From contig NC_043007.1 in NCBI RefSeq assembly GCF_006345805.1, positions 17,174,001 through 17,238,000 of the forward strand: a DNA stretch of 64,000 nt. Direction: 5' to 3'. The DNA is from Octopus sinensis (Eukaryota). Shown piece by piece: positions 2,994-63,841 of this stretch. The first letter of the stretch is position 1. Every line of letters begins with the position of its first letter. The position numbers and the translations under genes are program-made. The notes beneath the pieces were generated by a model that saw only the letters and a program-made list of their open reading frames with translations, was not told where the DNA came from and searched no databases.

Positions 2994-3109
2994 CTACAGG
3001 ATAAAGAATACATTTATATTGGTTGAAAGTTTTGGCACAAGGCCAGCAAAGTTTAGGAGAGGGATTAAGTAGATTACATCAACCCAGGTGCTCAACTGGT
3101 ACGTATTTT

Positions 3110-4291: not shown

Positions 4292-5512
4292 AACCCATCC
4301 ATCCGTCCGTCCGTCCGCCCGCCCGCTATAGTGGAGGCATATTGCCCAGTGATTAGAGCAGCGGACTCGCAGTCAAGGGATCATGGGTTTGAATCTCAGA
4401 CCGGTTGAGAGATGTGTGTTTATGAGCGAAACACCTAAGCTCCACACGGCTCCGGTAGAAGGTAATGGCGAACTTCTGCTGACTCTTTCGCCAGAACTTT
4501 CTCTCACTCCTTCCTCCTGCATCTTGCAGCTCACCTGCGAAGGACCAGCGTCCCGTCCAGGTGGGGAACCTATACTCCAAGGAAACCGGAGTGGCTCGAG
4601 AAGGAACAAATAAGCTATAACACCCAGCAGCAAGGCTCACTCCAGGTCACACACCTGTAGGGTAAGCTATATATGTACCAATCTATCTATCTATCTATCT
4701 AATTTCAGAGTTCTTGAAAAGGTCACAGACACTCCACTTTTTCTCCTCCTCCTCCTCCTTTTCCTCCCCTTCCACCGCCTTCTTCCTCCTTCCTTCATCT
4801 TTTCCCCCCTCCCTTTCCTTTTCCTCTTCCTCCTCTCCTCCCTCCACACCCCGTCCTATTCCCCTTCTTTTATCCTCTAGATCAGTTTAAAAATAAACTT
4901 TAATATCCGTCAGGTTCGACTTTTATATTGCATCATTTTTGAGTCCAAGAAATATCTACTGGGGTCTCTTTATTCAACCCTACCCAACCAATTGTACATC
5001 TTTCGCTTCGTGAATACAATCAGAAACTAATAGATAATCCAAAACGAAAAAACTAAAAGACTTAGCCATATTCCAGTTGGCTCTTCACAAAATTCAAAAA
5101 ACAATTGCTTACTTAAAAAGAAAAATATCCCAATTGTCCACCTAACACAAAGACATCAAAATTTACGTAACATACGCTTGTTCTCACAGGGGAAAACTGT
5201 TACGTACCAAAAAGATTGTTGTTAAAGTCTAAACTGGCAGTGAACATTGTTCAAGGGAGATAAATATAACTATTTTAATTGATTTTTAAATGAATTACTT
5301 CCCTTGACTAATTTCTTCTTTCTCGCTTAATTTCTTCAGTTGTCTGGACAATACTCATTTTTCTACAGAACCATTCATAAAGAAATTATTATAAATTATA
5401 ATCCATGACCTACAAATAATAATCCACTTGAACCTGTCCTTGGTTTTATGATATAAACTGTTTTAAAGTGATCTAAATTAACAGTAACAGATAAGGCAGT
5501 AAGAGAAACTGG

Positions 5513-8180: not shown

Positions 8181-8252
8181 CGGGATGTGGCTCAATGGTA
8201 GAGTCTTTGCTTTGCATGCAAAAGGCCCCAGGTTCAATACATAGCATCTCCA
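8181..8252 (+). tRNA. tRNA-Ala(TGC)-like sequence, probably a pseudogene
   Basis: 72-nt cloverleaf: D stem GCTC/GAGT, perfect anticodon stem TTTGC/GCAAA with TGC at 8213-8215, T loop TTCAATA; C1:C72 mismatch and two T-stem mismatches. Confidence 0.7.
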
Positions 8253-9292: not shown

Positions 9293-9903
9293 GGCGGCGA
9301 GCTGGCAGAATCGTTAGCACGCCGGGCGAAATGCGTAGCCGTATTTTGTCTGCCGTTACGTTCTGAGTTCAAATTCCACCGAGGTCGACTTTACCTTCCA
9401 TCTTTTCGGGGTCGATAAATTAAGTACCAGTTACGCACTGAGGTCTATGTAATCGACTTAATACCTATGTCTGTCCTTGTTTGTCCTCTCTGTGTTTAGC
9501 CCCTTGTGGATAGTAAAGAAATAGGTATTTCGCCTGTCGCTAATGTTCTGAGTTCAAATTCCGCCGAGGTCGACTTTGCCTTTCATTCTTTCGGGGTCGA
9601 TTAAATAAGTACCAGTTATACACCGGGGTCGATGTAATCGACTTAATCCGTTTGTCTGTCCTTGTTTGTCCCTTCTGTGTTTAGCCCCTTGTGGGTAGTA
9701 AAGAAATAGGTATTTCGTCTGCAGCTAACGTTCTGAGTTCAAATTCCACCGAGGTCGACTTTGCCTTTCATCCTTTCGGACTCGATTAAATAAGTACCAG
9801 TTACACACTGGGGTCGATATAATCGACTTAATCCGTTTGTCTGTCCTTGTTTGTCCTCTCTGTATTTATCCCCTTGTGGGTAATAAAGAAATAGGTATTT
9901 GTC
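9293..9903 (+). mobile_element. SINE family B, tandem multimer of a 184-185-bp unit
   Basis: One A-box head plus repeated B-box units; further arrays at 14836-15252 -, 15525-15850 +, 17462-17790 +, 36705-37185 +, 41680-42420 +, 42420-42670 -. Confidence 0.88.
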
Positions 9904-14375: not shown

Positions 14376-16131
14376 CAATTTATTACATGATAGTAAGCTA
14401 ATTTCTTAATTACTTAATCAGTTTATTGTTTAACCCCAGGTCAATTCTGGTCATGTAAAGCTATGATCAAAGGCATTCCAGTTGAAATTATTCTGCATTG
14501 TTTTATAAGAGGGAGAATTTGGCTGCTAATTCTAGTATGATAGGTCAGAATGCAAGGGCTCTTCGCCAGCTTGCAGTTAACCAGGTAGAACATATAGCTG
14601 CTACTCTCAATGACTGGCAGAGCAATGTCTTTGTCAACTGCTATAAAGGCAGACAAGAGAGTATCGTTTAAAGCTTGTGCCAGAATGTGAAATTACACAT
14701 GCCATGCTTCTACTGGCAAAGATCTTACTAAAGAACAAACAACACTACCTTCCCATTGTCAACCTGGAGAAAGCCAGTGCTCATTAACCCCTTGACAACG
14801 GTTGACACAAATATGCGATCACGCTTTTGCTTGCTTACCTATTTCTTTACTACCCACAAGGGGCTAAACGCAGAGGGGACAAACAAGGACAGACAAACGG
14901 ATTAAGTCGATTATATCAACCCCAGTGCGTAACTAGTACTTAATTTATCGACCCCGAAAGGATGAAAGGCAAAGTTGACCTCGGCGGAATTTGAACTCAG
15001 AACATAAAGACAGACGAAATACCTATTTCTTTACTACCCACAAGGGGCTAAACACTGAGGGGACAGACAAGGACAGATGAACGGATTAAGTCGATTATAT
15101 CGACCCCAGTGCGTAACTGGTACTTAATTTATCGACCCCGAAAGGATGAAAGGCAAAGTCGACCTCGGTGGAATTTGAACTCAGAACATAGCGGCAGACG
15201 AAATACCGCAAAGCATTTTGCCCGGCATGCTAACGATTCTGCCAGCTTGCTGCCTTACTTTTGCTTGCCTACCCATGGCTAATGTAAATATACAATGTAG
15301 AACTACCCTACATCTATCATGGACTTTTTAGCGGCTGACGTATGTTTACATTCGCTATCATATACTTTATCTCTTGAGGTGCACGCGCTTGCCATCCCAT
15401 GCATTATCTTAACTATTTTAGGTTACGTTCAAGTCATGAGACTAGCAGTAGACCAATGAAATGCGGATACTTTACATGCATAATACCGTATTTTGTGTTG
15501 CACCAAACAAAAGCTATTTTTTGAGCTGGCAGAAGCGTTAGCTCGCTGGGCGAAATGCTTAGCAGTATTTCGCTATGTTCTGAGTTCAAATTCCGCCAAG
15601 GTCGACTTTGCCTTTCATCATTTCGGGGTCGATTAAATAAGTACCAGTTACGCACTGGGGTTGATATAATCGACTTAATCCGTTTGTCTGTCCTTCTTTG
15701 TCCCCTCTGTCTTTAGTCCCTTGTGGGTAGTAAAGAAAAAGTATTTCTTCTGCCGCTACATTCTGAGTTAAAATTCCACTGAGGTCAACTTTGCCTTTCA
15801 TCCTTTTGTGGTCAATATATTAAGTACCTGTTGTGTACTGGGGTTGATCTAATTGACTGGCAACCCCCTTCCCAAACATTTCGAGCCTTGTGCCTAGAGT
15901 AGAAAAGGAATCATTAGCACGCCAGGCAAAATGCTTATTGGAATTTCGTTCGTCTTTACATCCTGAGTTCAAATTCCACCAGAATCAACTTTGCCTTTCA
16001 TCCTCTCAGAGTTGATAAAATATGTACCTGTTTGGCACTGGGGCCACTGTTATCAGCTTACCTGCCTCCTCCATAAATGCTGGCATTGTGCCGAAATTTG
16101 AAATCTATAAATAGACAGAGAGAGTACTTAC

Positions 16132-17226: not shown

Positions 17227-18155
17227 TAACTCTGCTATAGCAGTACAACACCCCATAACACACACACACACACACACACATGCATGCACACTTCATCATT
17301 ATCATCATCATCATCATTTAATCTCCTTGTTCCATGCTGGTATGAGTTGGATAGCTTGACAGGATCTGATGGGTCCAAGGATTGTGCCCTCTTGTCTGCT
17401 TTAGCATGATTTCTATGGAAGCCCTTCCTTATGCCAGTAATTTTACAGCATGCTGTAAGAAGGCGGTGAGCTGGCAGAAACGTTAGCACGCCAGGCGAAA
17501 TGCTTATCGATATTTCATCTGCCGTTACGTTCTGAGTTCAAATTTTGCCAAGATCGACTTTGCTGTTCATCCTTTCAGGGTCGATAAATTAAGTACCAGT
17601 TACGCACAGGGATTGATGTAATCGACTTAATCCCTTTGTCTGTCCTTGTTTGCCCCCTCTGTGTTTAGCCCCTTGTGCGTAGTAAAGAAATGGGTATTTC
17701 ATCTGCCGTTACGTTCTGAGTTCAAATTCTGCCGAGGTCGCTTTGCATTTCCTCCTTTCGGGGTCGATAAATTAAGTACCAGTTACACACAGGGATTTAA
17801 TTTAATTTAATTAATTAGTTTAATTAGTTTAATTAATTAATTTAATTTTAAAAAATTCTTTAAAAAAATTAATTAATTAATTAAATTTAAAAAATTCTTT
17901 AAAAAATTCTTCTTTAAGAAAAAATTTAATTTAATTTAATTAATTAGTTTAAATAATTAGTTAATTAGTTTAATTAATTAATTAATTAATTAATTTTAAT
18001 TTTAAAAATTTAAATTGTTTCTTTAAGAAAAAGTGGAAATGGATTTGTAGCACAATTAGAAAAGACATTCACATTACAAGAATATATAAAAAAAAAAACA
18101 GCAAACAAAGGGCCTACAACAACACCAACAAGAGGGACACACGAAACACACAAAC

Positions 18156-18428
18156 CTCATCATCCTCTTCTTCTTCAGCTTGGTCTCCTTCACGGTACTC
18201 AGTTTCCACAACGTAATAGTTTTGTTCTGTGCCCAATATTTTACCCCAGAATCTCACTTGCTGGACCGGGTTGCTGTCGACCAAATGCTTCATTGCTATC
18301 CAAACACGGAATAGTTCTTCCCTGCCAATTCCGATTCCGCCTTGTTCAAAGTAGAAAGCGGTTTCCATGACGTTGGGCAGAGGCGACTCAACTTCCTCTT
18401 CACGTTCATCTAAGTCATCGTCTATTTT
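18156..18428 (-). CDS. RSPH4A: RSPH4/6 exon 3
   Basis: LPNVMETAFYFEQGGIGIGREE...RFWGKILGTEQNYYVVETEYREG, hallmark family sequence; acceptor atttcag, donor gtttgt; 273 nt. Confidence 0.96.
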
Positions 18429-20074
18429 CTGAAATTGTTGGAGAGGAAGAGGAAAATGATTGTCTGTCATCTGTTTGTTTATTGTGTGTATGTGGGTGTG
18501 TGTGGGTATGTATGTGTATGTGTGTAGGTATATGTGTGTGTGTTTGTGTTTGTATGTGTGTTTGTGTTTGTGTGCATTTGTGTTTGTGTGCGTGTTTGTG
18601 TGTATGTGTGTGTGTGTACTTGTGTATGTGTGTTTGCGGGTATGTATGCGTATGTGTCTAAGTATATGTGTGTATGTTAGTGTGTGTTTGTGTGTATGCA
18701 TGTGTTTGTGTGAGTGCTTGTGTATATGTATACATGTGTGTTTGTGTTTGTGTGTGTGTTTGTGTGTATGTGTGAGTGTATGTGTGAGTGTATGTGTGTG
18801 TACTTGTGCATGTGTGTGGTATGCATGCAAAAATGCATGTATGCATCTTTGATTTGTTTTTATCCTTTACATGCTTGAGTCATTGGACTGCAGCCATGCT
18901 TGAACACCACCTTGAAAGTTTTTACTTGAACAGATTGTCCTCAGTACTTTGTTCTTGTACTTTTTAAAGTTTGGTACTTATTCTATCAGTTTCTCTTGCT
19001 GAACCACAAAGTTACAAGGATATACACAAATCAACACCACTTATCAAGAGGTCGTGGGTACTAAAACTCACACACACACAGACACACACACACACACACA
19101 CACACAACAGGCTTCCACACAGTTTCTGTGTAAAAAAAATTCACTCACAAGGCATTGGTCTATCAAAATTTGTTAAGGCTGAAATAATGCAAAATGAAAT
19201 ACAACGGTTGAAAGTTTCCCTTGTATTTCTTTGACATTTCAGGGTTAGAACCGTTCTTCATATGTCCTGATGAAGAGGTTCTAGCCCCCTAAATACTCAA
19301 GTAATACAAACTAAAACTTTAACTGCTGTTTTGTTAACAAGTATGCAATAATGTACAAATGTCTGCAAAGTGAACAGCATATGAAGCATGTATCTGACTC
19401 ATACTGTCCACTTTCCAGACATTTGTACATTACTGCATATGCTCTTTAGGCACTTTTGACAAGTTGTGGTGCACCTGAGCACTGTATACAATAATTTCAT
19501 TATTATTATTATTAGTAAGTTGGTTTATTTTATATTTGCATACTCATCTGGCACCTGTGCCCGTGGCACGTAAAAAGCACCCACTACACTCACGGAGTGG
19601 TTGGCGTTAGGAAGGGCATCCAGCCGTAGAAACATTGCCAGATCAGACTGGGCCTGGTGCAGCCTTCTCGCTTCCCAGACCCTAGTTGAACCGTCCAACC
19701 CATGCTAGCATGGAAAGTGGACGCTAAATGATGATGATGATTAAATTTTAAATGATGAATATGATGATGATGATGATGAGGATGCAGGGATACATTTACT
19801 TCTATACCCAGTCGAGTTTAAATCTTTTGAGCACTACTAAGTGTATTCTACACAGAAAATAGCTGGATCTCATCTATGAACTATATATATATAAGAGATC
19901 TCAGGCAAGTAGTGTTTGGGGCCTGAAGATATGCCATAAGGCTAAACCCCTTATTGTACAAGAAACCCAGGGTAACCCCATAAACCAGCCCCACCCATTA
20001 TAATATTAACTGCTCTACATCTTAGAGTGTGCTTCTCTTCCAGATATATGTATTTCTACAAATATATATATATC

Positions 20075-24400: not shown

Positions 24401-25298
24401 GAGAAAAAAAATATATATGTATGTATGTATAATATATAATAATAATAATAGGGAGTATAACTCCAAACTTACAGGGAAAAAGTGAATTTAGTATTAAATC
24501 AAATTTCACAATATAAATATATAATAAATGAATTAGAGAAAAAAACACTATTATGCAACTCAAATATATATATGAGAGAGAGAGAAAGCTAATAGAGAAC
24601 TTAATTCAATGTAGATTCATCAAGTAGATTCATGATCAAAGTCAATCCATCCATGACCATTACATTATCCAATACTATTATCCTTACTTTGTTAAGACAG
24701 TAAAGAATAATTTGTAGGAGATTTAGTTACTATTTTTCATTGGCTTGCAGCTTTAGAGCAAGCAAATTTTAAGAATACTAGTTGTTTCCAAGAGAGATGT
24801 GAACTACCACAGGTACCAAAACTGGTTTTGTACTTATGTAAGAAACTACTTATCGGAATTTTTTTTTTGAAAGCAAAAAAAAAAAAAGAAAAATCAAACA
24901 GGTTCAGTCCCACTGGGTGGCATCTTGGGCAAGTGTCTTCTGCTATAGCCCCGGGCCGACCAGTGCCTTGTGAGTGGATTTGGTAGAAGGAAACTGAAAG
25001 AAGCCTGTCGTATATATGTATATATATATATATGTGTGTGTGTTTGTGTGTCTGTGTTTGTCCCCCCTTCATTGCTTGACAACCGATGCTGATGTGTTTA
25101 CGTCCCCGTCACTTAGCGGTTCGGCAAAAGAGACCGATAGAATAAGTACTGGGCTTACAAAGACTAAGTCCCGGGGTCGATTTGCTCGACTAAAAAGGCG
25201 GTGCTCCAGCATGGCCGCAGTCAAATGACTGAAACAAGTAAAAAAAAAAAAGTAAAAGAGTAAAAGAGAAAGAGAGAAGAGAGAGAAAAAAAGCTTAC

Positions 25299-25663
25299 AG
25301 ATTTTCTCCAGTTTTTGTACTTGCGGTCAAAAGGAATGCTTTGGCATTGCGCAGGTCTTGTTCTTCTTTACCGGTCAGATATGTTTGTTCAGCAAAAATT
25401 CTGGATCCTCTCGAAGAAGATACTGAACCGGGCAGGTTTGTATTTAACATTGCATTTATTGGGTCGATCAGGTTGGGACGAGTCTCTGGCAGGTCTTCAT
25501 TGTAAAGCAACACATCCTCTGCTCCGATGTCTACATCTTCTTCGTCTTCTTCTCCCTCATCTGCTCCTGGTTCTTTTACATCTTCTATTCCTACTTCTGG
25601 ATCTTCTTCAACCAGTTCTTCTTCCAGTAATTCATCTGTTGCCTCTAAGTGTTCCTGTGACAT
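25299..25663 (-). CDS. RSPH4A: Radial spoke head protein 4/6 homolog, coding exon 1
   Basis: ATG at 25663; MSQEHLEATD...AKAFLLTASTKTGENL matches the RSPH4/6 motif preceding YDHL; donor CT|gtaagc, phase 2; 365 nt. Confidence 0.9.
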
Positions 25664-27774: not shown

Positions 27775-27862
27775 ATGCTTCCGAGGAAAAAGGACATTTC
27801 GGGTCTAAACGATGGCATCGCGGGTAAATATGTTAAAAGAGATACGCCACCCGTCCTTAGAA
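27775..27862 (+). CDS. SAV1: Salvador homolog, coding exon 1
   Basis: MLPRKKDISGLNDGIAGKYVKRDTPPVLR resembles the SAV1 N-terminus as I recall it (human MLSRKK...GKYVKKETSPLLRN); donor A|gtaagt, phase 1. Too short for the ORF track. Confidence 0.88.
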
Positions 27863-28240
27863 GTAAGTACTCAGCTTTGAATATTCTCAATTATTCGCTT
27901 ATTGCGAAGTGACTTGTAGATTGTGTTGCTATTTTTTTAAAAATTCCAGTTTAACATTTTGAAGATTTGTTAATTGTATTTCTATCTCTCTCTTTCACAC
28001 GCACTCACTTTATACACATGCTCAGTGTTATATACACATTAGTCACTATTGCATAAATATCTATGGTCCACGCAGGTGTATTTAACTGTCATAGTTGTGT
28101 ATATGTAACTAGCTTGCAACACAACATATTAACAGCAACCAAGAATATATATATATGTGTGTAGGCATATGTGTATATGTATTTATGTTGGTATGTATAT
28201 GCATATATATGTGTATGTATAAATGCATGCATGTGTGTCA

Positions 28241-31871: not shown

Positions 31872-31902
<31 letters not shown>

Positions 31903-33920: not shown

Positions 33921-36309
33921 TTATATATATATATATCATCATCATCATCGTTTAACGTCCGCTTTCCATGCTAGCATGGGTTGGACGGTTCGACCGGGGT
34001 CTGGGAAGCCAGGGGCTGCACCAGGCTCCAGTCTGATCTGGCAGTGTTTCTACAGCTGGATGCCCTTCCTAACGTCAACCACTCTGCGAATGTAGTGGGT
34101 GCTTTTTACGTGCCACCAGCACAGATGCCAGGGGGCATCTGGCATCGGCCACGATCGGTTGGTGCTTTTAACGTGCCACCAGCACGGAAGCCAGCCAAGG
34201 CGGCGCCGGCATCGGCCATGTTCGGATGGTGCTTTTTATGTATATATATATATATATATATACACACATGTACACATATGTGTATATTTATGTAAACCTA
34301 CATAGTAGATATACAAACGTAGCAGATTTTAACATTTTTCCATAGACTGAAAAAAATGATAAGCAGCTTTGATTGATTTTTCAATGCTATTTGGGTTCCC
34401 AACTGAAGTGTCTACATCATATGATCACTCTCAGAGAAACAAGTAACCAACCTGTTTATATTCACAACAAACCCAGAAGCTTCAGATGGCCGGAGCTACC
34501 ACTTTGCATTCTATGGGTACTTAATCCTTTGTGTAATATCAGAGGTCTGTCGGTACCTTGATACTGTCTGCAAAGTATCAAGGTATGACATATGTAAGCC
34601 TATTACTCTTTTACTTGTTTCAGTCATTTGACTGCAGCCATGCTGGAGCACCGCCTTTAGTCGAGCAAATCGACTCCACGACTTATTCTTTGTAAGCCTA
34701 GTACTTTTTCTATCGGTCTGTTTTGCTGAACCGCTAAGTTACGGGGACGTAAACACACCAGCATCGGTTGTCAAGCGATGGTGAGGGGACAGACACATAC
34801 ACATTTATATGTATAGATGACGGGCTTCTTTCAGTTTCCGTCTACCAAATCCACTAAGTTACGGGGATGTAAACACACCAGCATCAGTTGTCAAACGATG
34901 TTGGGTGTACAAACACAGACGCACAAACATATACACACACATACATATATATATATACACATATATACTACGGGCTTCTTTCAGTTTCCGTCTACCAAAT
35001 CCACTCACAAGGCTTTGGTCGGCTTGAGGCTATAGCAGAATACACTTACCCGAGGTGCCACGCAGTGGGATTGAATCCGGAACCATGTGGTTGGTAAGCA
35101 AGCTACTTATCACACAGCCACTTGCTTACATCATTGTCAGTTTAATGTCCATTTTTTCCATAGTTACATGGGTCAGATGAGATTTGTTGAGCTGTAGCTG
35201 TGTGGTTAAGAAACGTGCTTATCAACTACGTGATCTCAGGTTCAGTCCCACTGCATAGCACCTTGGGCAGCTGTCTTCTACTGTAGCTATGGGCTGACCG
35301 AAAAGTTGTGAGTGAATTTGGTAGATGGAAACTGAAAGAAGCTTGTCATGTATTTGTGCATACCATTGTCTAGACATCATATGGTGGTTGTGGATGAGCA
35401 TCATCATCATCATACAACTGGGGTTGTTCATTTCCAGTCTGCCATGAAAATATTCCTGGCCATGGAGAAAATGTTACGTTGCTTAGAAATAGATAAGGGT
35501 TGGTGACAGGAAGGGCATCATCCAGCCATAGAAAACTTGTCTCAAATATCACATGCTCCATGCAAGCATGGACATTAAATGATGCGTATATGTATGCATG
35601 CAGGCATTTATGTATGTATATACATGCCTACATCATACTTACTTACCATGGCCATCACTCAGGCTCGAGAAGGACTTGGTAGCCATAAAGATATATTAAA
35701 TACCATACAAGAAGAATTTCTGATTTGTCATTGATCTTATACACACATTAAGAGGAAATTACAGAGGTTATTGGATTGCTGGACCAGGCTACAATGATCA
35801 TGGAGAGAGTCGTAGCACAATTGCTTAAGGACTGTGTTAGCCTTATTGCAATGTAGTTTGGTTTTTCTATTCAGAAGAGTTCCCACTTAAGTAATCTTCT
35901 ACCAACCACATGGTTCCGGGTTCAGTCCCACTGCGTGACACCTTGGGCAAGTGTCTTCTACTATAGCCTCGGGCTGACCAAAGCCTTGTGAGTGGATTTG
36001 GTTGACGGAAACTGAAAGAAGCCCGTCGTATATATGTATATATATATATATATGTATGTGTGTGTATATGTTTGTATGTCTGTGTTTGTCCACCCAACAT
36101 CACTTGACAACCGATGCTGGTGTGTTTATGTCCCTGTAACTTAGCGGTTCGGCAAAAGAGACCGATAGAATAAGTACTAGGCTTACAAAGAATAAGTCCT
36201 GGGGTCGATTTGCTCGACTAAAGGCGGTGCTCCAGCATGGCCACAGTCAAATGACTGAAACAAGTAAAAGAGTAAAGGAGAGAGAGACAACTACAGGAGA
36301 AATACATAG

Positions 36310-44702: not shown

Positions 44703-44735
44703 TATATATGTGTGTGTGTATATGATGTATATATA

Positions 44736-44776
<41 letters not shown>

Positions 44777-47700
44777 TAGCAGAAGTTAAAGAGTAACTCA
44801 ATAGCATGAAACTCTTAGCCTTAGAGTCACTGTAATTTCTACCTATTAACTATACATATATAAGTGCAGGAGTGGCTGTGTGGTTAGTAGCTTGCTTACC
44901 AACCACATGGTTCTGAGTTCAGTCCCACTTTGTGGCACCTTGGGCAAATGTCTTCTACTATAGCCTCAGGCCGACCAAAGCCTTGTGAGTGGATTTTGTA
45001 GATGGAAACTGAAAGAAGCCTGTCGTATGTATGTACATATATATATGTATGTATGTGTTTGTACCCCCACCATCGCTTGACAACTGATGTTGGTGTGTTT
45101 ATGTCCCCGTATTTAATGGTTCAGCAAAACAGACCGATAGAATAAGTACTGGGCTTACAAAGAATAAGTCCTGGGGTCGAGTTGCTCGATTAAAGGCAGT
45201 GCTCCAGCATGGCCACAGTCAAATGATTGAAACAAATAAAAGAATAAAAGATATACTCTTTTACTTGTTTCAGTCATTTGACTGCGGCCATGCTGGAGCA
45301 CCGCCTTTAATCGAGCAACTCGACCCCGGAACTTATTCTTTGTAAGCCCAGTACTTATTCTATCGGTCTCTTTGCCAAACCGCTAAGTAACGGGGACATA
45401 AACACACCAGCATCGGTTGTCAAGCAATGCTAGGGGGACAAACACAGACACACAAACACACACGCACATATATATATATATATATATACATATATACGAC
45501 GGGTTTCTTTCAGTTTCCGTCTACCAAATCCACTCACAATGCTTTGGTCGGCCCGAGGCTATAGTAGAAAACACTTGCCCAAGGTGCCGCGCAGTGCGAC
45601 TGAACCCGGAACCATGTGGTTGGTAAACAAGCTACTTACCACACAGCCACTCATATATATATCGGATTGGTGCCTGGTACAGCCTTCTGGCTTACCAGTC
45701 CTCAGTCAAACTGTCCAACCTGTGCCAGCATGGAATGTAGAGGTTAAACGATGATGATATATACCATGTTTTGGGTTCTATTTTTCTGTTTGTATCACCA
45801 AACCTACACACATACACACAAGATCCTTAACCCAATATCTATCTGCCTGTGTGTCTGTTTCTATCATTTGAATGCTGTGTTCATTATATTTATGATAGGT
45901 AAGATGCTAGTTCGCCCACCCATGTGCCAGAATTCTCTCAAGCTTAACCTGTAATCATTTATCATTCTTAGGGATTGAATTGACTGTGTAGGTGGCCTTA
46001 GTCAAAGTAAATATTTTCATTCAGCTCTGGATATAGTCATTTCAAATGTATTTCCACGTAATAGGAAAAAAAAAATACTAAAGAAAAACATAAAAGCCTC
46101 CATGAACCAACAAGGAAGTAGCATTTCTATGGTTCCACAACCTGCTAGAAATAGCAGCCAAATCTCCTTTATGCCACATATCACCTGCTACCACCTTTAA
46201 TTGAGAAAGTACACAGAAGCCCGTCGTATATATATGTGAACTTGTGTGTACCGTTGACGATTTTGTTTCCTCTGTCTTCCCTTCTCTGGATCTTTCCTTC
46301 TCCTATGTTTCCGACGAAGAGCTCCGCTCAAAACGTTAAAACCTCCTTCTTTCCTGAGCGTCCAATAATACTATATTTGTTCCACGTCCTCGCGTTGTTG
46401 TGTTTTTGTGTGCTTTCTTGTTTGGATTAACTATATATATATGCGTGTGTGTGTTTGTGTGTCTGTGTTTGTCCTCCTAGCATTGCTTGACAACCGATCC
46501 TGGTGTGTTTATGTCCCCGTTACTTAGCGGTTCGGCAAAAGAGAGCGATAGAATAAGTACTGGGCTTACAAAAAGAATAAGTCCCGGGGTCGAGTTGCTC
46601 GATTAAAGGTGGTGCTCCAGCATGGCTGCAGTCAAATGACTGAAACAAGTAAAAGAGTAAGAGTATAAAAAACTTCCATGAGCCAATAAGGAAGTAGCAT
46701 TTCTATGGTTCAACAACCTGCTAGAAATAGCAGCCAAATCTCCTTTATGCCACATATCACCTGCTACCACCTTTAATTGAGAAAGTACCCAGGTACAGGC
46801 GTGTGTGGTTAAGAAGCTCACGTTGCAGTCACATGGTTTCAGGTTCAGTCCTACTGTGTGGTACCCTGGGAAAGTGCCTTCTACTCTAGCCACAAGGTGA
46901 CCATTGACTTGTGAATGAATTTGGTGGGCAGAAATTATGTGGAAGCCCTTCTGTGTGTGTGTGTGTCCGTGTCCTCCAACCACTTGACAACTGGTGTTGG
47001 TTTGTTTACATCCCTGCAATGTAACTTAGGAGTTCAGCCAAAAGAGACTGAGAGATGAAATACCAAACTTTAAAAAGATAAGCACTGGGGTCGATTTGTT
47101 AGAACTAAACCCTTCAAGGGGGTACCCCAGCACAACCACAATCTAATGACTGAAAAATGTAAAAAAATTAAAGATTAGCCAATGTTGTCCTATGTTGTCC
47201 TTAAAAGACATAATGGTCATGGCTGGATTACTTTTGATCATAGGTCTGTTTGATGAGAGCTATTGTGGCAGTTGTGCAACAGCAAAACTGCAACTGGAGT
47301 AAAACTAATAGCATAGGAGTAACTTCCAGAAGGGTAAGCGTGTAGGTCAGTAGCCATGTGATATTTGATCATGATTATTTATAATTAATGTTGACAGTCA
47401 GAATTTGATATCTCATTAGTAATAGGCATAGGAGTGGCTGTGTGGTAAGTAGCTTGCTTACCAACCACATTGTTCTGGTTTCAGTCCCACTGCGTGGCAC
47501 CTTTGGCAACTGTCTTTTATTATACCCTCGGGCTGACCAAAGCCTTGTGAGTGGATTTGGTAGATGGAAATGAAAGAAGCCCGCTCCATCCGTCCCCCCC
47601 CCTTTCTACGTTTCGATCTCTCTCACCTCCAGCCCCCTCGATCTTCTCTTTCTTCTCCTCCCTCGTCCACCTTCTCTCCTTTTCATCTGTCCCTTTCTCC

Positions 47701-52090: not shown

Positions 52091-52530
52091 TATTATTATA
52101 CCATAGTTTAGCTTACATTTTTTAATGTGTCCTACCTTTTTTAATAAGACTGTTGGATATCAAATTTGAGGGAGATTTTGCTGCTATATTTAGCTGGTCA
52201 GCCAACCATTTAGACTCTCCTTCATTGGCAGATTTATAAATTACCTACAACAACACGAATGAGAGGACAAAAAAAAATTTTTTTGAAATGAAAAAAGAAT
52301 GAAAAGATATGAGTAATTTGGATAATTATGTCTTTCCTCATTGTTTAGAAATAAAGATTAAGATATAGTTTATGTTGCTACCTTTCTCTGTTCAGTTCAG
52401 TTTGCTATTGTGATTCACTTGACTTAAGAATACTCCCATAGATTAATCACCTCTGCTATGTCAGTCAGAAGTCAAGTGTCCTGCAAATTATCAAGCTTTT
52501 CAATTCCCCTTGAATTTTGTCATGCGTATC

Positions 52531-52566
<36 letters not shown>

Positions 52567-52764
52567 GCAGCAAAATCTCCCTCAAATTTGATATCCAACA
52601 GTCTTATTAAAAAAGGTAGGACACATTAAAAAATGTAAGCTAAACTATGGTATAATCAATTATCAATTATAATAAAGGGTAAAATTAATTAATTAATTAA
52701 CTAGTAATTAATAATTCTACCAAGTAGAATTCGGTATGAAAAAGGACCATTTTTCAGTAAACTT

Positions 52765-53070
52765 ATATTTTATAATTACGAGTATAATTATAATTAGGGT
52801 TCAGCAAAGATTTACTTTACCACATACCGAAGTTTAGAAATAGCAGCTAAAAGAACCTTAGCAATTTCTTCTACTATAAGAAGAGACTCTCGGACAAAAC
52901 AAAATACTCGAAATAACCCACGAGTATTTTCGAGTATTTTGTTTTGTCTGGGAGTCTCTTCTTATAGTAGAAGAAATAGCTAAGGTTCTTTTAGCTGCTA
53001 TTTCTAAACTTCGGTATGTGGTAAAGTAAATCTTTGCTGAACCCTAATTATAATTATACTCGTAATTATA

Positions 53071-53076
<6 letters not shown>
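52765..53076. repeat. 149-bp-arm inverted repeat with a 14-nt loop
   Basis: 52765-52913 vs 52928-53076, three mismatches. Confidence 0.97.
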
Positions 53077-53113
<37 letters not shown>

Positions 53114-53527
53114 CTATGTATGTGTCTATATGTTTGTATGGGAGGATAATATCTCTGTATACACGCATGTATGTTTGTATGCTGGCAAAGGATGATGCAA
53201 ATATTTTTGAAAGCAAGAGTTTAAATGAGCTGCACAATAGCACACAGTTGGCTGTGTAGATGGGTCGAGCTTGGCTTAGTGTTTGTGGTTGTGTATGTCC
53301 TCTCAAGGATGGGCTCACTATTGTGAATGGAGTCATTATGTCACATGAAGCATTGACTACTGCATGTTCATGGGAAAAGATCATTTAACACGCAGTGTAC
53401 ACGGGAAAGTTTGCAAGGCTGTTAAGAAGCTCACTGTGTGACCATTTGCAGTCCCACTGCATTTCACCCTGAACAAGGGCCTGCTGCTATAGCACTGAGT
53501 CAAACAATGCCTTGTGAGTGACAGAAA

Positions 53528-54123
53528 CGGCGAGCTGGCAGAATCGTTAGCACGCCGGATGAATGCTTAGCGGTATTTCATCTGCCGCTACATTCTGAGT
53601 TCAAATTCCGCCGAGGTCGACTTTGCCATTCATCCTTTCGGAGTCGATTAAATAAGTACCAGTTATGCACTGGGGTCGATATAATCGACTTAATCTGTTT
53701 GTCTGTCCTTGTTTGTCCTCTCTGTGTTTAGCCCCTTGTGGGTTGTAAAGAAATAGGTATTTCGTCTGCCGCTACGTTCTGAGTTCAAATTCCGCCGAGG
53801 TTGACTTTGCCTTTCATCCTTTCGGGGTCGATAAATTAAGTACCAGTTATGCACTGGGGTCGATATAATCGACTTAATCTGTTTGTCTGTCCTTGTTTGT
53901 CCTCTCTGTGTTTAGCCCCTTGTGGGTAGTAAAGAAATAGGTATTTTGTCTGCCGTTACGTTCTGAGTTCAAATTCCGCCGAGGTCGACTTTGCCTTTCA
54001 TCCTTTCAGGGTCAATTAAATAAGTACCAGTTACGCACTGGGATCGATGTAATCAACTTAATCCCTTTGTCTGTCGTTGTTTGTCCCCTCTATGTTTAGC
54101 CCCTTGTGGGCAATAAAGAAATA
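53528..54123 (+). mobile_element. SINE family B trimer
   Basis: Unit starts (ggtatt) at 53572, 53756 and 53940, an exact 184-bp period. Confidence 0.9.
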
Positions 54124-60380: not shown

Positions 60381-61314
60381 TGGTCCACCTGTGGCCATCC
60401 TTTTTAGAAGAGGTTCAAGGCCCACAGAGAATTTCTTAGTGGTTCATCTGTTGCCAGCTACTTTAGAAAAGACCCATGGTTCACAGAGAATTTTCAGTGG
60501 TCCACCTGTGGCCAATCTTTTTAGTAAAGATGTAAAACCCACAGAAAACTTCTTGGTCATCTGTGGCCAATCTTTTTAGTAAAGATGCAAGAGCCACAGA
60601 ATTTCTAGTGGTCCATTTGTGGCCAATCTTTTTAGTATAGACACAAGGCCCACAGAGAACACTTCTCGGTGGTCCATCTGTGGCCAATCTTTTTAGAAAA
60701 GCTGCAAGGCCCTCAGAAAACTTGTGGTGGTCTCTCTGTGGCCAACCTATTTAGAAGAGGTTCAAGGCCCACAGAGAATTTCTTAGTGGTTCATCTGTTG
60801 CCACCTACTTTAGAAAAGACCCATGGTTCACAGAGAATTTTCAGTGGTCCACCTGTGGCCAATCTTTTTAGTAAAGATGTAAAACCCACAGAAAACTTCT
60901 TGGTCATCTGTGGCCAATCTTTTTAGTAAAGATGCAAGAGCCACAGAATTTCTAGTGGTCCATTTGTGGCCAATCTTTTTAGTATAGACACAAGGCCCAC
61001 AGAGAACACTTCTCGGTGGTCCATCTGTGGCCAATCTTTTTAGAAAAGCTGCAAGGCCCTCAGAAAACTTGTGGTGGTCTCTCTGTGGCCAACCTATTTA
61101 GAAGAGGTTCAAGGCCCACAGAGAATTTCTTAGTGGTTCATCTGTTGCCACCTACTTTAGAAAAGACCCAAGGCTCACAGAATTTTCAGTGGTCCACCTG
61201 TGGCCAATCTTTTTAGTAAAGATGCAAGACTCACAGAATTTCTAGCGGTCCATCTGTGGCCAATCTTTTTAAAAAAGCTGCAAGGCCCTCAGAAAACTTG
61301 TGGGGGTCTATCTG
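60381..61314. repeat. Higher-order tandem repeat: 347-bp unit of six 55-61-bp monomers
   Basis: Monomers of 59+58+56+55+61+58 = 347 bp; identical ORFs at 60481 and 60828 confirm the period; 16 monomers in all. Confidence 0.93.
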
Positions 61315-63112
61315 TTCTCTTGTTGCTCCTCTTTTAGCATTCAGATTACTCTGTCAAATGTTCTGCTTATTTATTAACATTGTTTTCAATTAATCATGCA
61401 TTATCTCATACCTTTTGCTGATGATGATCATCATCATTATCGTTTAACGTCTGTTTTCCGCGCTAGCACAGGTTGGACGGTTCGACCGGGGTCTGGGGAG
61501 CCAGGGGCTGCTCCAGGCTCCAGTCTGATCTGGCAGTGTTTCTACAGCTGGATGCCCTTCCTAACGCCAACCACTCCACGAGTGTAGTGGGTGCTTTTTA
61601 CGTGCCACCTGCACAGGTGCCAGAGGGGTCTGGCATCGGCCACGATCGGTTGGTGCTTTTTTTATGTGCCACCGGCACAGAAGCCAGTCGAGGCGGTGCT
61701 GGCGTCGGCCACATTTGGATGGTGCTTTTTATGTGCCACCGGCACAGAAGCCAGTCGGGGCGGTGCTGGCATCGGCCACGTTCGGATGGTGCTGTGATTG
61801 TTTATTTGTAGAGTGACATTGTAGGGTGAATGTGAGAGATCTGATCTGTCCTATTTGAAAATGAAACAGGTAGAATATTTTGGGCTGGATATGACCAGTT
61901 TAAATGCTGAAGAATTAAAGCACAGTGTAAAGGGATTTGACAGGTGATATTGTCATCAGGTGTGTAACACACACTGAAAGGCCCAGTTTGTTGGTAATGC
62001 TTCTGCAGTTTAGTGTATGTGTGTGTCTGCATGTTCTTGTTTACTATGTGTTTGTGTATCTATATGTATGTTCATGTATGTTTTGAGTACTTGCATACGT
62101 GTGTTGTGTGCATATGCAAGTTTGGCCAAAAGTCACCTGACTGTAATTCAAAACGCATCTAATTCCAAGATTAAAACAAAAAAAAAATTATTTTATATGA
62201 GACTTCACTAATAAATAGACAAATGTTCTCCATAACCTGACATTGCTTTCGTCAACATCAAATTTTCTTCCAGCGGCCCTATTACCATGCTCTTCAGCAT
62301 ATGATATAACTTTAAGTTTAAACATAGCTGAATAAGATCTACGAGACATTTTATGGGCATGTAATGTATAGAATGTTTTATTGGAGATTAATGTACAGGT
62401 TTAAGTCCCGCTTATAAAAAACCCTAGTAAAGACCCACAGTAGTTCAAACATTTAATACCGGTATTTAATCAAGTATCTATTGTTTGCCACGGTAATGAT
62501 ACAAACTGCCAATACAAACAGCAAAATGAACTATTTAGCACTAAACTATTAAGCACAATTTGTGCGTAATTAGCCCAGCAGCACCTAGTCGAACAAACAC
62601 TTGTGCACTTGCGTAATATAATAATGGTGATGTTCTTAACTGTTATATGGGAATGTAAATATGTTTGCAATTGTTTTTGTCACATGATATTCTGTGTTCT
62701 GAATACTTTTATTTTAGTAAATGTTGCTTACTGCAAGTTATGGATGATTCTTTTATGACTTCATTGCTTTCAGGCTTAGCTTAATGTATTTTCGTGCCCG
62801 ACATCACAAAATGCGTCTGAATAAACATTGCCGGACAGCAAATAGAGACTCGGACATTGCTTAGAAAACATTTTTCATTTTTTACCTCGTATATAGTACG
62901 CACTAGGTATTTTGACCTTTAAATTTTGGGGAAAAAATGCGGATTATACTCGAGGATTTACGGTATGTGCTGCTGAAATTGCTGATAATGTGTCTGATAT
63001 GTCCATGCATCTTTTACAACTCCAACTGCAGTAATTGCATGTACATACATTATGTATACATACTCAATATTTTTGCACCAAATGACTAATTTCTTAATTT
63101 TCTCTCTTTTAG

Positions 63113-63841
63113 ATTATGATACTCCTGTACGGCACACCAATGTATTTCAACGTCGAAGTACGAAAACCTTGGCTTCTTACGCACCACAACAATCTGTAAA
63201 TAGCTTTGCTTATAGCGGCCACTCATACATCTCAGCACCAAAGCTACAATGTCATTCCTCAAATTTTTCCCCAACTTCCCACGGTAGTGGAGGTGTTTCT
63301 TCCCCCAACACCAATTCTAATTGTAACTCCAGTGCCAACAACCCAGCTGGCCATATATACCAGAACCTTAATGCAGCTTCTTCACCAGCCCCATCTTCTA
63401 CCCCGTCGCCAGGACATTCTCCTGCGTCGACCTTCTCATCATCCGGCTATGGGTCGGCCTCTAATTTCAACCAAGCTTTTCAGAACATGTCACTGACCAA
63501 CTATCGGCCCAATTCACAGGACTCTCCCAAGCTACAGTCACACCACAATGCGCAACAACACCAAACTGCAACCTGCAATCAGCAGCAAATGGGTCCTCAG
63601 AGTGGAAGTGCATCCCCACAACTGAACCAGGTTGGGTTACATCATCAACATCAGCAACAACACGGGGCTTTGTTGGTGCCGAGTCAGACTGCTGCAAACC
63701 CTGGTCGGGTGGTACCTCGAGCAATTCTTAATCAAGGTGCCCACCACCAGTCACTTACACCGAGTGCACCACCACCTCCCTCACCACAGTCCCTGCATTC
63801 AAAGATGAAACCAGATAATTCACTTGCATCTATAAGAGAAG
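63113..63841 (+). CDS. SAV1: Salvador homolog, coding exon 2 (S/N/Q/H-rich region preceding the WW domains)
   Basis: Strong acceptor ttctctcttttag|AT TAT GAT; joined to exon 1 gives LR-N-YDTPVRH in frame (human LRNLMPSFIRH); open for 729 nt; donor G|gtgaga. Confidence 0.8.

What the first reader, a model, noticed from the sequence alone, without database searches (positions are those of the whole stretch)
52765..53076. 149-bp near-perfect hairpin in SAV1 intron 1, better paired on the sense strand
The arms differ at three positions only. Two become G-U/U-G wobbles in the + strand RNA (A-C mismatches on -). The 14-nt loop contains a tandem copy of cgagtat. The mismatches argue against a simple read fold-back artefact. 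It is the longest near-perfect, short-loop dsRNA stem I found: a candidate ADAR hyper-editing substrate, hairpin-RNA/endo-siRNA source, or cruciform fragile site.
Basis: partly seen in the sequence, partly recalled or inferred. Interest (0 to 1): 0.7.

Follow-up and report, generated by a model that had tools for sequence, protein, structure and literature searches.

The report
Young palindromic insertion in octopus SAV1 intron
A real 312-base near-perfect DNA palindrome lies deep in the first intron of the octopus Hippo-pathway gene salvador (SAV1); it is a young insertion into a TA-repeat, shared by two sister octopus species, that has decayed at about the neutral rate, so it is a clear but ordinary case of hairpin birth, not a conserved functional element.

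Summary
The arms are 52765-52913 and 52928-53076 (149 nt), with three mismatches, a 14-nt loop and a duplicated CGAGTAT(TTT).

The window is Octopus sinensis. The hairpin lies in SAV1 intron 1, and + is the sense strand.

It is not an assembly artefact. The independent O. vulgaris assembly has the orthologous palindrome. There a SINE-like insert splits the left arm, and the asymmetric centre is the exact reverse complement of the O. sinensis centre. O. bimaculoides has only the empty (TA)n site.

The arms differ about as much within a species (2.0% and 5.7%) as between species (3.5-6.7%). Intron divergence is 3%. This fits a palindrome that was nearly perfect around the species split and then decayed neutrally.

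The "better paired on the sense strand" point is not significant. It rests on two C>T changes on + (p=0.25). Pooling both species gives 6 of 8 (p=0.14).

Beside it, O. sinensis alone carries a 95-nt inverted copy of sequence 370 bp upstream, joined by 5-nt microhomology.

- **Best reading:** fold-back or template-switch synthesis at a TA-repeat.
- **Main rival:** a palindromic MITE. Genome-wide copy number could not be tested.
- **Untested:** ADAR editing is plausible but generic in octopus. Small RNAs were not examined.
- **Cruciform:** the 14-nt spacer argues against extrusion.

The parts
52765..52913 (.). Left arm of the palindrome (149 nt, 30% G+C overall, outer 36 nt 17% G+C)
   Evidence: orthologous in O. 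vulgaris at L004 34630-34682 + 34833-34920
52914..52927 (.). 14-nt asymmetric centre (loop) TAACCCACGAGTAT. CGAGTATTTT at 52921-52930 repeats in tandem at 52931-52940. AAAATACTCG (52901-52910) can pair with either copy.
   Evidence: The O. vulgaris centre ATACTCGTGGGTTA is its exact reverse complement, and the 10-nt duplication is mirrored to the left side.
52928..53076 (.). Right arm of the palindrome (149 nt)
   Evidence: O. vulgaris L004 34935-35083
52657..52764 (.). Segment B: 108-nt AT-rich sequence of unknown origin lying immediately left of the palindrome. Present in O. sinensis and O. vulgaris and absent from O. bimaculoides, so probably co-inserted with the palindrome.
   Evidence: only weak low-complexity similarity to the arm ends; no other match in about 230 kb
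52562..52656 (-). Segment A: inverted copy (95/95 identical) of 52095-52189, found only in O. sinensis. The entry junction shares ATATA with the (TA)n tract and the exit junction shares ATAAT/ATTAT. With its source it forms a second stem of about 95 bp with a 366-nt loop.
   Evidence: (I2); absent from O. vulgaris, where (TA)n runs straight into segment B
52095..52192 (+). Source of the inverted copy A
   Evidence: conserved in O. vulgaris at L004 about 34020-34189, 98.8%
52531..52566 (.). Left half of the compound microsatellite, (TG)6(TA)12, into which everything was inserted
   Evidence: (I3-I15); orthologous (TA)9 in O. bimaculoides at L003 23982-23999
53077..53113 (.). Right half of the compound microsatellite, (TA)12(CA)6
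27775..27864 (+). SAV1 (salvador) coding exon 1 (residues 1-30)
   Evidence: tblastn of P0002, 96.7% identity; start of the called gene in L004 and L005
63106..63840 (+). SAV1 coding exon 2 (residues 28-272)

Best explanation
The feature is a young, lineage-specific palindromic insertion in a (TG)n(TA)n(CA)n microsatellite deep in SAV1 intron 1.

Shown:
- It is real and present in two independently assembled sister species, O. sinensis and O. vulgaris.
- It is absent from the intact orthologous (TA)n site of O. bimaculoides.
- Almost every arm difference is private to a single arm, so the two arms were essentially identical around the sinensis/vulgaris split. They have since diverged at about the local neutral rate.
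- The asymmetric centre is inverted between the two species.
- O. sinensis alone has acquired, at the left edge of the same insert, a 95-nt inverted copy of sequence about 370 bp upstream, with microhomology at the junction.
- In O. vulgaris a SINE-like element has split the left arm.

Inferred:
- A break or stalled fork in the TA-repeat was repaired by template-switching synthesis. This first copied about 270 nt (segment B, one arm and the centre) from an unidentified template. It then folded back on the nascent strand at the short inverted repeat AAAATACTCG...CGAGTATTTT and copied the arm in reverse before rejoining the TA-repeat.
- Later template switches between the arms inverted the spacer and may have homogenised at least one site.
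- In SAV1 pre-mRNA the element folds into a 149-bp duplex. Like many other inverted repeats in octopus introns, it is probably hyper-edited by ADAR and removed with the intron, with no selected function.
For: Reality and age:
- L005 (O. sinensis CM016869.1) is identical to the window.
- L004 (O. vulgaris OX597824.1) carries the orthologous palindrome between the same flanks and next to the same segment B.
- L003 (O. bimaculoides) aligns on both flanks but has only (TA)9 plus an unrelated TE at the site.

Near-perfect at the split, then neutral decay:
- Of 13 variable arm positions, 10 have a change private to one arm and one (position 123) has a different base in each O. vulgaris arm. Only position 50 is fixed in both arms of each species, and position 57 is unresolved.
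- Distances are sinL-sinR 3/149, vulL-vulR 8/141 and 5-10 between species (3.5-6.7%).
- Intron 1 substitution divergence is 3.0%, with flanks at 3.6% and 5.4%.

Template switching at this site:
- Segment A is 95/95 identical to its source 370 bp upstream, inverted, absent from O. vulgaris, and joined through ATATA.
- The centre of O. vulgaris is the reverse complement of that of O. sinensis, with 1 mismatch in 51 nt.
- Both outcomes, creation of reverse-complement repeats and loop or spacer inversion, are documented products of template switching (PMC8794818; PMC8604942).

Single complex event:
- One multi-switch event accounts for the non-palindromic segment B and the palindrome arriving together. 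A MITE accounts only for the palindrome.

No evidence of a repeat family:
- No further copy was found in the 64-kb window, 30 kb further downstream, 77 kb of O. vulgaris or 57 kb of O. bimaculoides.
- No ORF relatives were found among 5.8 billion or 1.84 billion proteins.

dsRNA potential:
- Searches show the fold.
- Octopus shows exceptional hyper-editing linked to abundant near-perfect dsRNA loci (PMC5625713).
Against: - No single-arm (pre-fold-back) state was observed in any species, so the fold-back step is inferred and not seen.
- The template for segment B and the arm was not found within about 100 kb in three species.
- The terminal TA...TA lies inside a TA-repeat and is compatible with a Tc1/mariner-type target-site duplication, so a palindromic MITE cannot be excluded. 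The whole genomes could not be searched.
- The centre does not have the simplest form expected of priming at the short inverted repeat. An extra 10-nt tandem copy has to be explained by slippage.
- Only one outgroup is available, so deletion in O. bimaculoides is not formally excluded.
- The O. sinensis-only segment A and the loop orientation rest on single assemblies without read-level checks.
- TE insertions at the same microsatellite in other species reflect a TE family that prefers or carries (TA)n, so they are not independent evidence of fragility.
- No RNA data were available for editing or small RNAs.
Confidence: 0.55

Rival explanations
1. The 312-bp palindrome is a copy of a palindromic (foldback-type) MITE that inserted at a TA dinucleotide of the microsatellite in the sinensis/vulgaris ancestor. 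Its hairpin is a by-product of long terminal inverted repeats.
For: It is small, AT-rich and non-coding, and is inverted-repeat over its whole length. It is bounded by TA/TAT on both sides within a TA-repeat. It is absent from the outgroup's empty site. Palindromic transposons are known dsRNA and editing substrates in other animals, for example the frog Harbinger repeat (PMC5625713).
Against: No second copy was found in about 230 kb from three octopus species, where the common SINEs occur dozens of times. No ORF relatives exist in the protein collections. The arms were essentially identical over all 149 nt at the species split. That is more typical of a freshly made inverted duplication than of a MITE copy inheriting imperfect repeats. 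This reading does not explain the adjacent non-palindromic 108-nt segment B, which has the same presence/absence pattern. The target-site duplication cannot be told apart from the microsatellite.
Confidence: 0.3
2. The palindrome is a selected RNA element: an hpRNA/endo-siRNA precursor or an ADAR-dependent regulator of SAV1 pre-mRNA, with pairing maintained on the sense strand.
For: It forms a 149-bp near-perfect stem in the sense transcript. Two of three mismatches are G.U on the sense strand. The arms in O. sinensis are slightly more alike (2.0%) than the between-species distance. One site (position 50) changed in both arms.
Against: The wobble bias is not significant: p=0.25 alone and 0.14 pooled. 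It is explained by C>T changes on the non-template strand, one of them at a CpG. Three differences are compatible with the neutral expectation of 4.5-6 (Poisson P 0.15-0.34). In O. vulgaris the left arm is split by a 149-nt insert with an 8-nt deletion and the arms differ by 5.7%. The element is absent from O. bimaculoides. Rfam gives only sub-threshold generic miRNA-hairpin matches on both strands.
Confidence: 0.05
3. The palindrome acts mainly at the DNA level as a cruciform-forming fragile site, like human palindromic AT-rich repeats (PATRRs), and drives recurrent breakage and rearrangement at this locus.
For: It is 312 bp, 70% A+T and near-perfect, and is embedded in TA repeats. As DNA one strand folds at -160.9 kcal/mol. 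Several independent structural changes lie within about 0.6 kb across three species: segment A, spacer inversion, an 8-nt deletion and TE insertions.
Against: The centre is a 14-nt asymmetric spacer with two mismatches 21-23 bp from it. In PATRR22 constructs a 9-nt spacer plus four central mismatches abolished extrusion and instability (PMC1851657). The TE insertions are explained by a TE family that sits next to (TA)n elsewhere in the window. The palindrome has survived in both lineages since their split. Hairpin formation on single-stranded replication intermediates, which the best explanation already uses, needs no cruciform.
Confidence: 0.1
4. The palindrome is an assembly or read artefact, such as a fold-back chimeric long read or a missed adapter.
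For: O. sinensis is a long-read assembly, and palindromes can arise from chimeric reads. No reads could be inspected. Exact-ORF look-ups for junction ORFs returned nothing.
Against: The same palindrome, next to the same segment B and between the same flanks, is in the independent O. vulgaris assembly. It carries its own substitutions and a SINE-like insert. The arms carry three mismatches. The failed look-ups are uninformative because the control exon-2 ORFs were also absent.
Confidence: 0.02

Closest known systems
Template-switch mutations (TSMs) that create reverse-complement repeats and invert hairpin loops or spacers (Löytynoja & Goldman 2017, PMC5453318; Mönttinen & Löytynoja 2022, PMC8794818; Abraham & Hazkani-Covo 2021, PMC8604942)
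   Same: A derived reverse-complement repeat is absent from the outgroup. It had a phase of perfect pairing followed by mismatches. The loop inverted in one lineage while the stem was kept. A neighbouring inverted copy of nearby sequence is joined by microhomology (segment A).
   Different: The described TSMs are mostly tens of nucleotides long and copy from within a few hundred bases. Here the arms are 149 nt and the spacer is 14 nt. The source of the first arm was not found locally, so a longer-range or ectopic template (MMBIR-like) or a mobile element has to be invoked.
Short-inverted-repeat-primed fold-back palindrome formation after a double-strand break (Tanaka et al. 2002 model; my own knowledge, not read here) and ODIRA-type hairpin-capped intermediates (PMC10766183, title and abstract only)
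   Same: A short inverted repeat (AAAATACTCG / CGAGTATTTT, 10-nt spacer) sits exactly at the centre of a much longer palindrome, as expected if it primed snap-back synthesis.
   Different: Those models produce kilobase- to megabase-scale palindromic amplifications. This is a 312-bp insertion. The centre carries an extra 10-nt tandem copy not predicted by the simplest version.
Human palindromic AT-rich repeats (PATRR11, PATRR17, PATRR22; PMC1851657)
   Same: It is an AT-rich near-perfect palindrome a few hundred bp long (PATRR17 about 190 bp, PATRR11 about 450 bp), non-coding, and at a site of structural change.
   Different: It has a 14-nt asymmetric spacer and near-central mismatches, features that abolish cruciform extrusion in PATRR constructs. 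No translocation or instability has been shown.
Palindromic MITEs and foldback elements as dsRNA sources (for example the heavily edited palindromic Harbinger repeat of Xenopus, PMC5625713)
   Same: It is a small, AT-rich, non-coding full-length inverted repeat inside an intron. It is a potential ADAR substrate without needing a partner copy.
   Different: No second copy was found in about 230 kb of octopus sequence. No unambiguous target-site duplication is visible. It is accompanied by a non-palindromic co-inserted segment.
Drosophila hpRNA loci (endo-siRNA-producing long hairpins; my own knowledge)
   Same: A long near-perfect stem with a short loop, transcribed by Pol II.
   Different: No small-RNA evidence. 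It is deep-intronic and not an independent transcript. It is not conserved and is decaying at the neutral rate.

Membership tests
Template-switch / fold-back generated inverted repeat | Reverse-complement repeat that is derived (absent from the outgroup at an otherwise intact orthologous site) | tested here: met
   O. bimaculoides L003 has both flanks and the (TA)n but no palindrome or segment B. O. vulgaris has it.
Template-switch / fold-back generated inverted repeat | The template arm pre-exists as single-copy sequence next to the new copy | tested here: inconclusive
   Met for segment A: the source 52095-52192 is present in O. vulgaris without the copy. Not shown for the 149-nt palindrome: no species has a single arm, and no template lies within about 100 kb.
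Template-switch / fold-back generated inverted repeat | Microhomology at the switch points | tested here: inconclusive
   Segment A enters through ATATA and exits through ATAAT/ATTAT. For the palindrome, a 10-nt inverted repeat sits at the centre, and the outer junctions lie in TA repeats where microhomology is unavoidable.
Template-switch / fold-back generated inverted repeat | Secondary events typical of arm-to-arm switching (spacer inversion, arm homogenisation) | tested here: met
   The centre is inverted between O. sinensis and O. vulgaris. One site (position 50) changed in both arms.
MITE (palindromic or foldback type) | Terminal inverted repeats; small, AT-rich, non-coding | tested here: met
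   (trivially met by any palindrome)
MITE (palindromic or foldback type) | Target-site duplication | tested here: inconclusive
   TA/TAT flanks lie inside a TA-repeat. TA is its own reverse complement, so a duplication cannot be told apart from the palindrome or the microsatellite.
MITE (palindromic or foldback type) | Many dispersed copies in the genome | tested here: inconclusive
   There are zero further copies in the window, L005, L004 or L003, about 230 kb in all, and zero ORF relatives. Whole octopus genomes are not searchable with these tools.
PATRR-like cruciform-forming palindrome | AT-rich near-perfect palindrome of about 190-600 bp | tested here: met
   312 bp, 30% G+C, 146/149 paired; sizes from PMC1851657
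PATRR-like cruciform-forming palindrome | Central symmetry (no spacer, no central mismatches), required for extrusion | tested here: not met
   A 14-nt asymmetric centre and mismatches 21 and 23 bp from it. By comparison, a 9-nt spacer plus 4 mismatches abolished extrusion (PMC1851657).
PATRR-like cruciform-forming palindrome | Demonstrated cruciform extrusion or breakage | not testable with these tools
   Needs plasmid extrusion assays or population structural-variant data.
ADAR hyper-editing substrate | Long, nearly perfect intramolecular duplex inside a transcribed region | tested here: met
   It folds as a 149-bp stem on the sense strand and lies in SAV1 intron 1. Transcription is inferred from the gene annotation only.
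ADAR hyper-editing substrate | Clusters of A-to-G mismatches in RNA reads | not testable with these tools
   No RNA-seq access.
hpRNA / endo-siRNA locus | 21-23-nt small RNAs from both arms with a Dicer signature | not testable with these tools
   No small-RNA data.
hpRNA / endo-siRNA locus | Pairing maintained by selection (compensatory changes, conservation) | tested here: not met
   Arm decay is at the neutral rate, the O. vulgaris arm is disrupted by a 149-nt insert, and the element is absent from O. bimaculoides.
Known miRNA precursor family (Rfam) | Score at or above the family's gathering threshold | tested here: not met
   The best match is MIR6024 at 44.8 bits against a threshold of 72. 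It matches both strands, which is a generic hairpin match.

The most novel reading that the evidence does not exclude
The hairpin is a case of gene birth in progress. A template-switch event created a perfect 149-bp stem inside the Hippo-pathway gene SAV1. That stem now yields endo-siRNAs, or acts as an ADAR-dependent brake on SAV1 pre-mRNA processing, in O. sinensis, and has been partly disabled by a SINE-like insert in O. vulgaris. This would make it a lineage-specific regulatory difference between sister octopus species.
Probability: 0.05. Interest if true: 0.6.

Novelty: new member of a known kind. Interest (0 to 1): 0.25.

Why it matters
If the origin reading is right, this locus is a compact, datable natural record of several events at one TA-repeat in a cephalopod germline: an insertion, a fold-back, a spacer inversion and a second inverted templated insertion. 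It shows how perfect long RNA stems can appear in one step and then decay neutrally. The three-species comparison brackets each step. That helps explain why octopus genomes are so rich in near-perfect dsRNA-forming loci, the substrate pool for their exceptional A-to-I editing. It does not by itself reveal a new mechanism or a function for SAV1. It also serves as a caution: G.U-versus-A.C asymmetry in a young hairpin can come from strand-biased C>T mutation and need not reflect selection on the RNA.

Tried and rejected
The gene was identified through the exon-2 ORF instead.

2. Pfam on the exon-2 ORF gave no family because the region is low-complexity.

3. Read-level or independent-assembly support was sought through exact look-ups of junction-spanning ORFs for O. 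sinensis and O. vulgaris. None were found. The control exon-2 ORFs were absent too, so the collection holds no ORF calls from whole-genome data of these species and the result is uninformative.

4. The MITE test through proteins used the 61-residue stop-free translation of the arm. It shared too few words for any candidate among 5.8 billion proteins and had no hit among 1.84 billion representatives. This is a weak negative, since a non-coding element is seldom called as an ORF.

5. A metagenome scan for a 22-nt arm segment conserved in all four arms gave 0 hits, as expected.

6. A search for a local template for segment B and the arm used blastn-short against the window, the L005 tail, L004 and L003. 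Only (TTAA)n simple-repeat matches came back.

7. The similarity of segment B to the arm ends is a low-complexity TAATTA-type match. It beats mononucleotide shuffles (0-3 of 500) but was judged not robust.

8. A mitochondrial origin (NUMT) was considered. ARAGORN in mitochondrial mode calls two "tRNAs", including a Thr with anticodon AGT. I take these as false positives in AT-rich hairpin sequence. Standard mode finds none, and table-5 translations are not ORF-like. No octopus mitogenome was available, so this is not excluded.

9. Rfam gave only sub-threshold miRNA-like matches on both strands.

10. The literature search for hpRNA/endo-siRNA in cephalopods returned nothing relevant.

11. TE insertions at the same microsatellite in O. 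vulgaris and O. bimaculoides were considered as evidence of fragility. This was rejected: the two TEs are only about 75% alike, so they are independent insertions, and the same TE head follows (TA)n at two other places in the window, which points to TE target preference.
Full report
**Observation.** The palindrome is exactly as described.
- The repeat finder reports arms 52765-52913 and 52928-53076: 149 nt, 98% complementary, 14 nt apart.
- A direct comparison gives three mismatched pairs. 52863 A opposite 52978 A is a transversion. 52890 T opposite 52951 G and 52892 G opposite 52949 T are both G.U in + strand RNA and A.C in - strand RNA.
- The loop is TAACCCACGAGTAT. CGAGTATTTT at 52921-52930 repeats in tandem at 52931-52940.
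- As RNA the + strand folds at -243.5 kcal/mol and the - strand at -237.6. Shuffles give about -59 (z -39 and -35).
- As DNA one strand folds at -160.9 kcal/mol (z -46).
- It is the best-paired short-loop inverted repeat in the window but not the longest. The window holds 96 inverted-repeat pairs of at least 60 nt within 3 kb, mostly opposed SINE-like copies at 85-92%. One of them has 221-nt arms and a 7-nt spacer.

**Context.**
- The 299-residue ORF at 63052-63951 matches O. bimaculoides "scaffold protein salvador" (P0002, 590 aa) at 97% identity over the exon.
- tblastn places SAV1 coding exon 1 at 27775-27864 and exon 2 at 63106-63840, both on +.
- A radial-spoke-head gene lies on the - strand upstream.
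- The 90% cluster of P0002 contains a protein that is identical in O. vulgaris and O. sinensis (P0004). Its two encoding loci were fetched.
- L005 (O. sinensis GCA_006345805.1, CM016869.1) is identical to the window: 2501/2501 around the hairpin and exact substring matches. The window is therefore O. sinensis.
- The hairpin lies 24.9 kb into the 35-kb intron 1 of SAV1, and + is the sense strand.

**Comparison with O. vulgaris.** L004 (GCA_951406725.2, OX597824.1) is an independent assembly. Its intron 1 differs from the window by 3.0% in substitutions (963/32008). The flanks of the hairpin differ by 3.6% and 5.4%. The orthologous palindrome is present between the same flanks, with these features:
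- The outer 53 nt of the left arm are at L004 34630-34682.
- A 149-nt SINE-like insert follows at 34684-34832, together with an 8-nt deletion.
- The inner 88 nt of the left arm are at 34833-34920.
- The 14-nt centre is at 34921-34934.
- A complete 149-nt right arm is at 34935-35083.
- The centre, ATACTCGTGGGTTA, is the exact reverse complement of the O. sinensis centre. The 10-nt tandem duplication is mirrored to the left side. Over 51 central nucleotides O. vulgaris equals the reverse complement of O. sinensis with one mismatch.

The palindrome is therefore real and predates the species split. Its asymmetric core has been inverted in one lineage.

**Comparison with O. bimaculoides.** L003 aligns on both sides: window 52152-52551 with L003 23595-24000, and window 53112-53396 with L003 24269-24555. 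Between these blocks it has only (TA)9, an unrelated 262-bp TE and TAATATATA. Neither the palindrome nor the adjacent 108-nt AT-rich segment B (52657-52764) is present. The simplest reading is an insertion of segment B plus the palindrome (420 bp) into the TA tract of a compound (TG)n(TA)n(CA)n microsatellite. That insertion came after the split from O. bimaculoides and before the sinensis/vulgaris split.

**A second, younger event.** In O. sinensis the left TA tract is followed by 52562-52656. This is a 95/95-identical inverted copy of 52095-52189, about 370 bp upstream.
- O. vulgaris lacks this copy. Its (TA)n runs directly into segment B. It retains the source at 98.8% identity.
- The entry junction shares ATATA with the microsatellite. 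The exit junction shares ATAAT/ATTAT with the start of segment B.
- This is the classical footprint of a replication template switch that copies the opposite strand (PMC5453318, PMC8794818).
- It shows that such events happen at this very site.

**Evolution of the arms.** I aligned the four arms, with the right arms reverse-complemented.
- There are 13 variable positions. Ten have a change private to one arm: sinL 2, sinR 1, vulL 2, vulR 5. Position 123 is C in both O. sinensis arms but T in vulL and A in vulR. Position 50 is fixed in both arms within each species (A,A versus G,G). Position 57 is unresolved because of the deletion.
- Distances are sinL-sinR 3/149 (2.0%), vulL-vulR 8/141 (5.7%), and 5-10 differences between species (3.5-6.7%).
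- No site groups left with left or right with right across species.
- This star-like pattern is what is expected if the arms were essentially identical at about the time of the split and then diverged independently at the local neutral rate.
- With 4.5-6 differences expected per pair, seeing 3 in O. sinensis is unremarkable (Poisson P 0.15-0.34).
- Nothing requires selection for pairing. The SINE-like insert in the O. vulgaris arm argues against constraint.
- Position 50 and the spacer inversion indicate at least occasional arm-to-arm template switching or conversion (PMC8604942 describes both outcomes).

**The sense-strand wobble argument.**
- By parsimony the two O. sinensis wobbles are both C>T changes on the + strand. 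Position 126 changed in the left arm. Position 128 changed in the right arm, at the CpG of an ancestral CCCGG.
- Any C>T on the + strand of a stem gives G.U in + RNA, and any G>A gives A.C. The observation therefore reduces to two C>T and no G>A (p=0.25).
- Adding O. vulgaris, 6 of 8 transitions give + strand wobbles (binomial p=0.14).
- An excess of C>T on the non-template strand of transcribed genes is a known mutational asymmetry (my own knowledge).
- The free-energy advantage of the + strand is 6 of about 240 kcal/mol.

**Origin.** Two readings remain.

*(a) Template switching or fold-back repair at a broken or stalled TA-repeat.*
- One complex event copies segment B, one arm and the centre from an unidentified template. 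It then snaps back at the short inverted repeat AAAATACTCG/CGAGTATTTT, which still marks the centre, and copies the arm in reverse before rejoining the TA tract.
- In favour: the arms were perfect at origin. The non-palindromic segment B arrived with the palindrome. A bona fide template-switch insertion (segment A) and a spacer inversion occurred at the same place. No other copy exists in the 64-kb window, the further 30 kb of L005, 77 kb of O. vulgaris or 57 kb of O. bimaculoides.
- Against: no single-arm intermediate was found and no template was found. An extra 10-nt tandem copy at the centre needs a slippage step.

*(b) A palindromic MITE inserted at a TA.*
- In favour: its size, AT-richness and TA flanks.
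- Against: the points listed in favour of reading (a).
- Genome-wide copy number is the defining test, and it could not be run. Only weak proxies were available, and all were negative.

I put (a) at about 0.55 and (b) at about 0.3.

**Consequences.**
- In SAV1 pre-mRNA the element should form a 149-bp duplex. In O. sinensis a second stem of about 95 bp with a 366-nt loop sits next to it.
- Octopus has the highest hyper-editing signal among 19 species and an unusually high fraction of loci able to form long near-perfect dsRNA (PMC5625713). ADAR editing of this hairpin is therefore likely, but generic.
- I found no way to test editing or small RNAs here.
- On cruciform formation, PATRR work shows that a 9-nt spacer with four near-central mismatches abolishes extrusion and instability (PMC1851657). 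This element has a 14-nt spacer and two mismatches 21-23 bp from it. Extrusion from duplex DNA is therefore doubtful, although hairpins on single-stranded replication intermediates remain possible.
- TE insertions at the same microsatellite in O. vulgaris and O. bimaculoides are independent, at about 75% identity. They reflect a TE family that also sits next to (TA)n elsewhere in the window, not demonstrated fragility.
- Rfam gives only sub-threshold, strand-symmetric miRNA-hairpin matches.

**Verdict.**
- The feature is real and young, and appears to be evolving neutrally.
- It is a new example of a known kind: an inverted repeat generated by template switching or fold-back, or alternatively a palindromic MITE, that creates an intronic dsRNA.
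- Its most instructive aspects are the inverted centre between sister species and the adjacent second templated inversion.
- Interest is modest, about 0.25.

Noticed in passing
window 52095-52192 and 52559-52656: A second near-perfect inverted repeat (98 nt, 99%, 366-nt spacer) lies immediately left of the hairpin. The right copy is specific to O. sinensis (absent from O. vulgaris) and is joined to the (TA)n tract through ATATA, the footprint of a recent template switch.
   Followed up: yes
L004 34684-34832 and 35118-35846 (O. vulgaris); L003 24001-24262 (O. bimaculoides): SINE-like or other TE copies with a (CAT)n/(ATG)n end have inserted independently into the left arm of the O. vulgaris palindrome and into the orthologous TA-repeat in O. 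vulgaris and O. bimaculoides (about 75% alike). The same TE head follows (TA)n at window 31878-31901 and 33922-33935, which suggests a target preference for TA repeats.
   Followed up: partly
window 45026-45246 / 45254-45474: Another short-spacer inverted repeat has 221-nt arms, 85% complementarity and a 7-nt spacer, and ends next to a (TA)10 run. Most of it (44703-45437) has no colinear counterpart in O. vulgaris. This is a TE-rich region that was not resolved.
   Followed up: partly
window 53572-54123 (also 9358-9900 and 14836-15207): Tandem arrays of 184-185-bp SINE-like units containing GTTCAAATTCCGCCGAGGTCGAC. There are three copies at 92% just 500 bp downstream of the hairpin. SINE units arranged head-to-tail instead of dispersed.
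   Followed up: no
window 60381-61315: A tandem array with nested periods of 56, 117 and 347 bp (about 16 copies of the 56-bp unit) lies in SAV1 intron 1, 1.8 kb upstream of exon 2. It is also present, with copy-number differences, in O. vulgaris.
   Followed up: no
window 3229-4292: A 75-bp minisatellite with about 14 copies produces long spurious ORFs (3088-3618 and 3631-4020) that have a repeating peptide.
   Followed up: no
window 25295-25663 (-) and 27775-27864 (+): A radial-spoke-head gene (Pfam Radial_spoke; exons at 18114-18830 and 25295-25663 on the - strand) and SAV1 are arranged head to head. Their first coding exons are about 2.1 kb apart, so a bidirectional promoter region is possible. 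The arrangement is conserved in O. vulgaris and O. bimaculoides.
   Followed up: partly
window 8181-8252: ARAGORN calls a tRNA-Ala(TGC) on the + strand. It was not checked whether this is a genuine tRNA gene or the tRNA-derived head of a SINE.
   Followed up: no
L001/L002 (Logan SRR11869394 and SRR11869391): A 2.4-kb genomic contig from an unidentified related octopod carries SAV1 exon 2 at 89% nucleotide identity. That species could provide a further outgroup for the hairpin site if its assembly were reachable.
   Followed up: no
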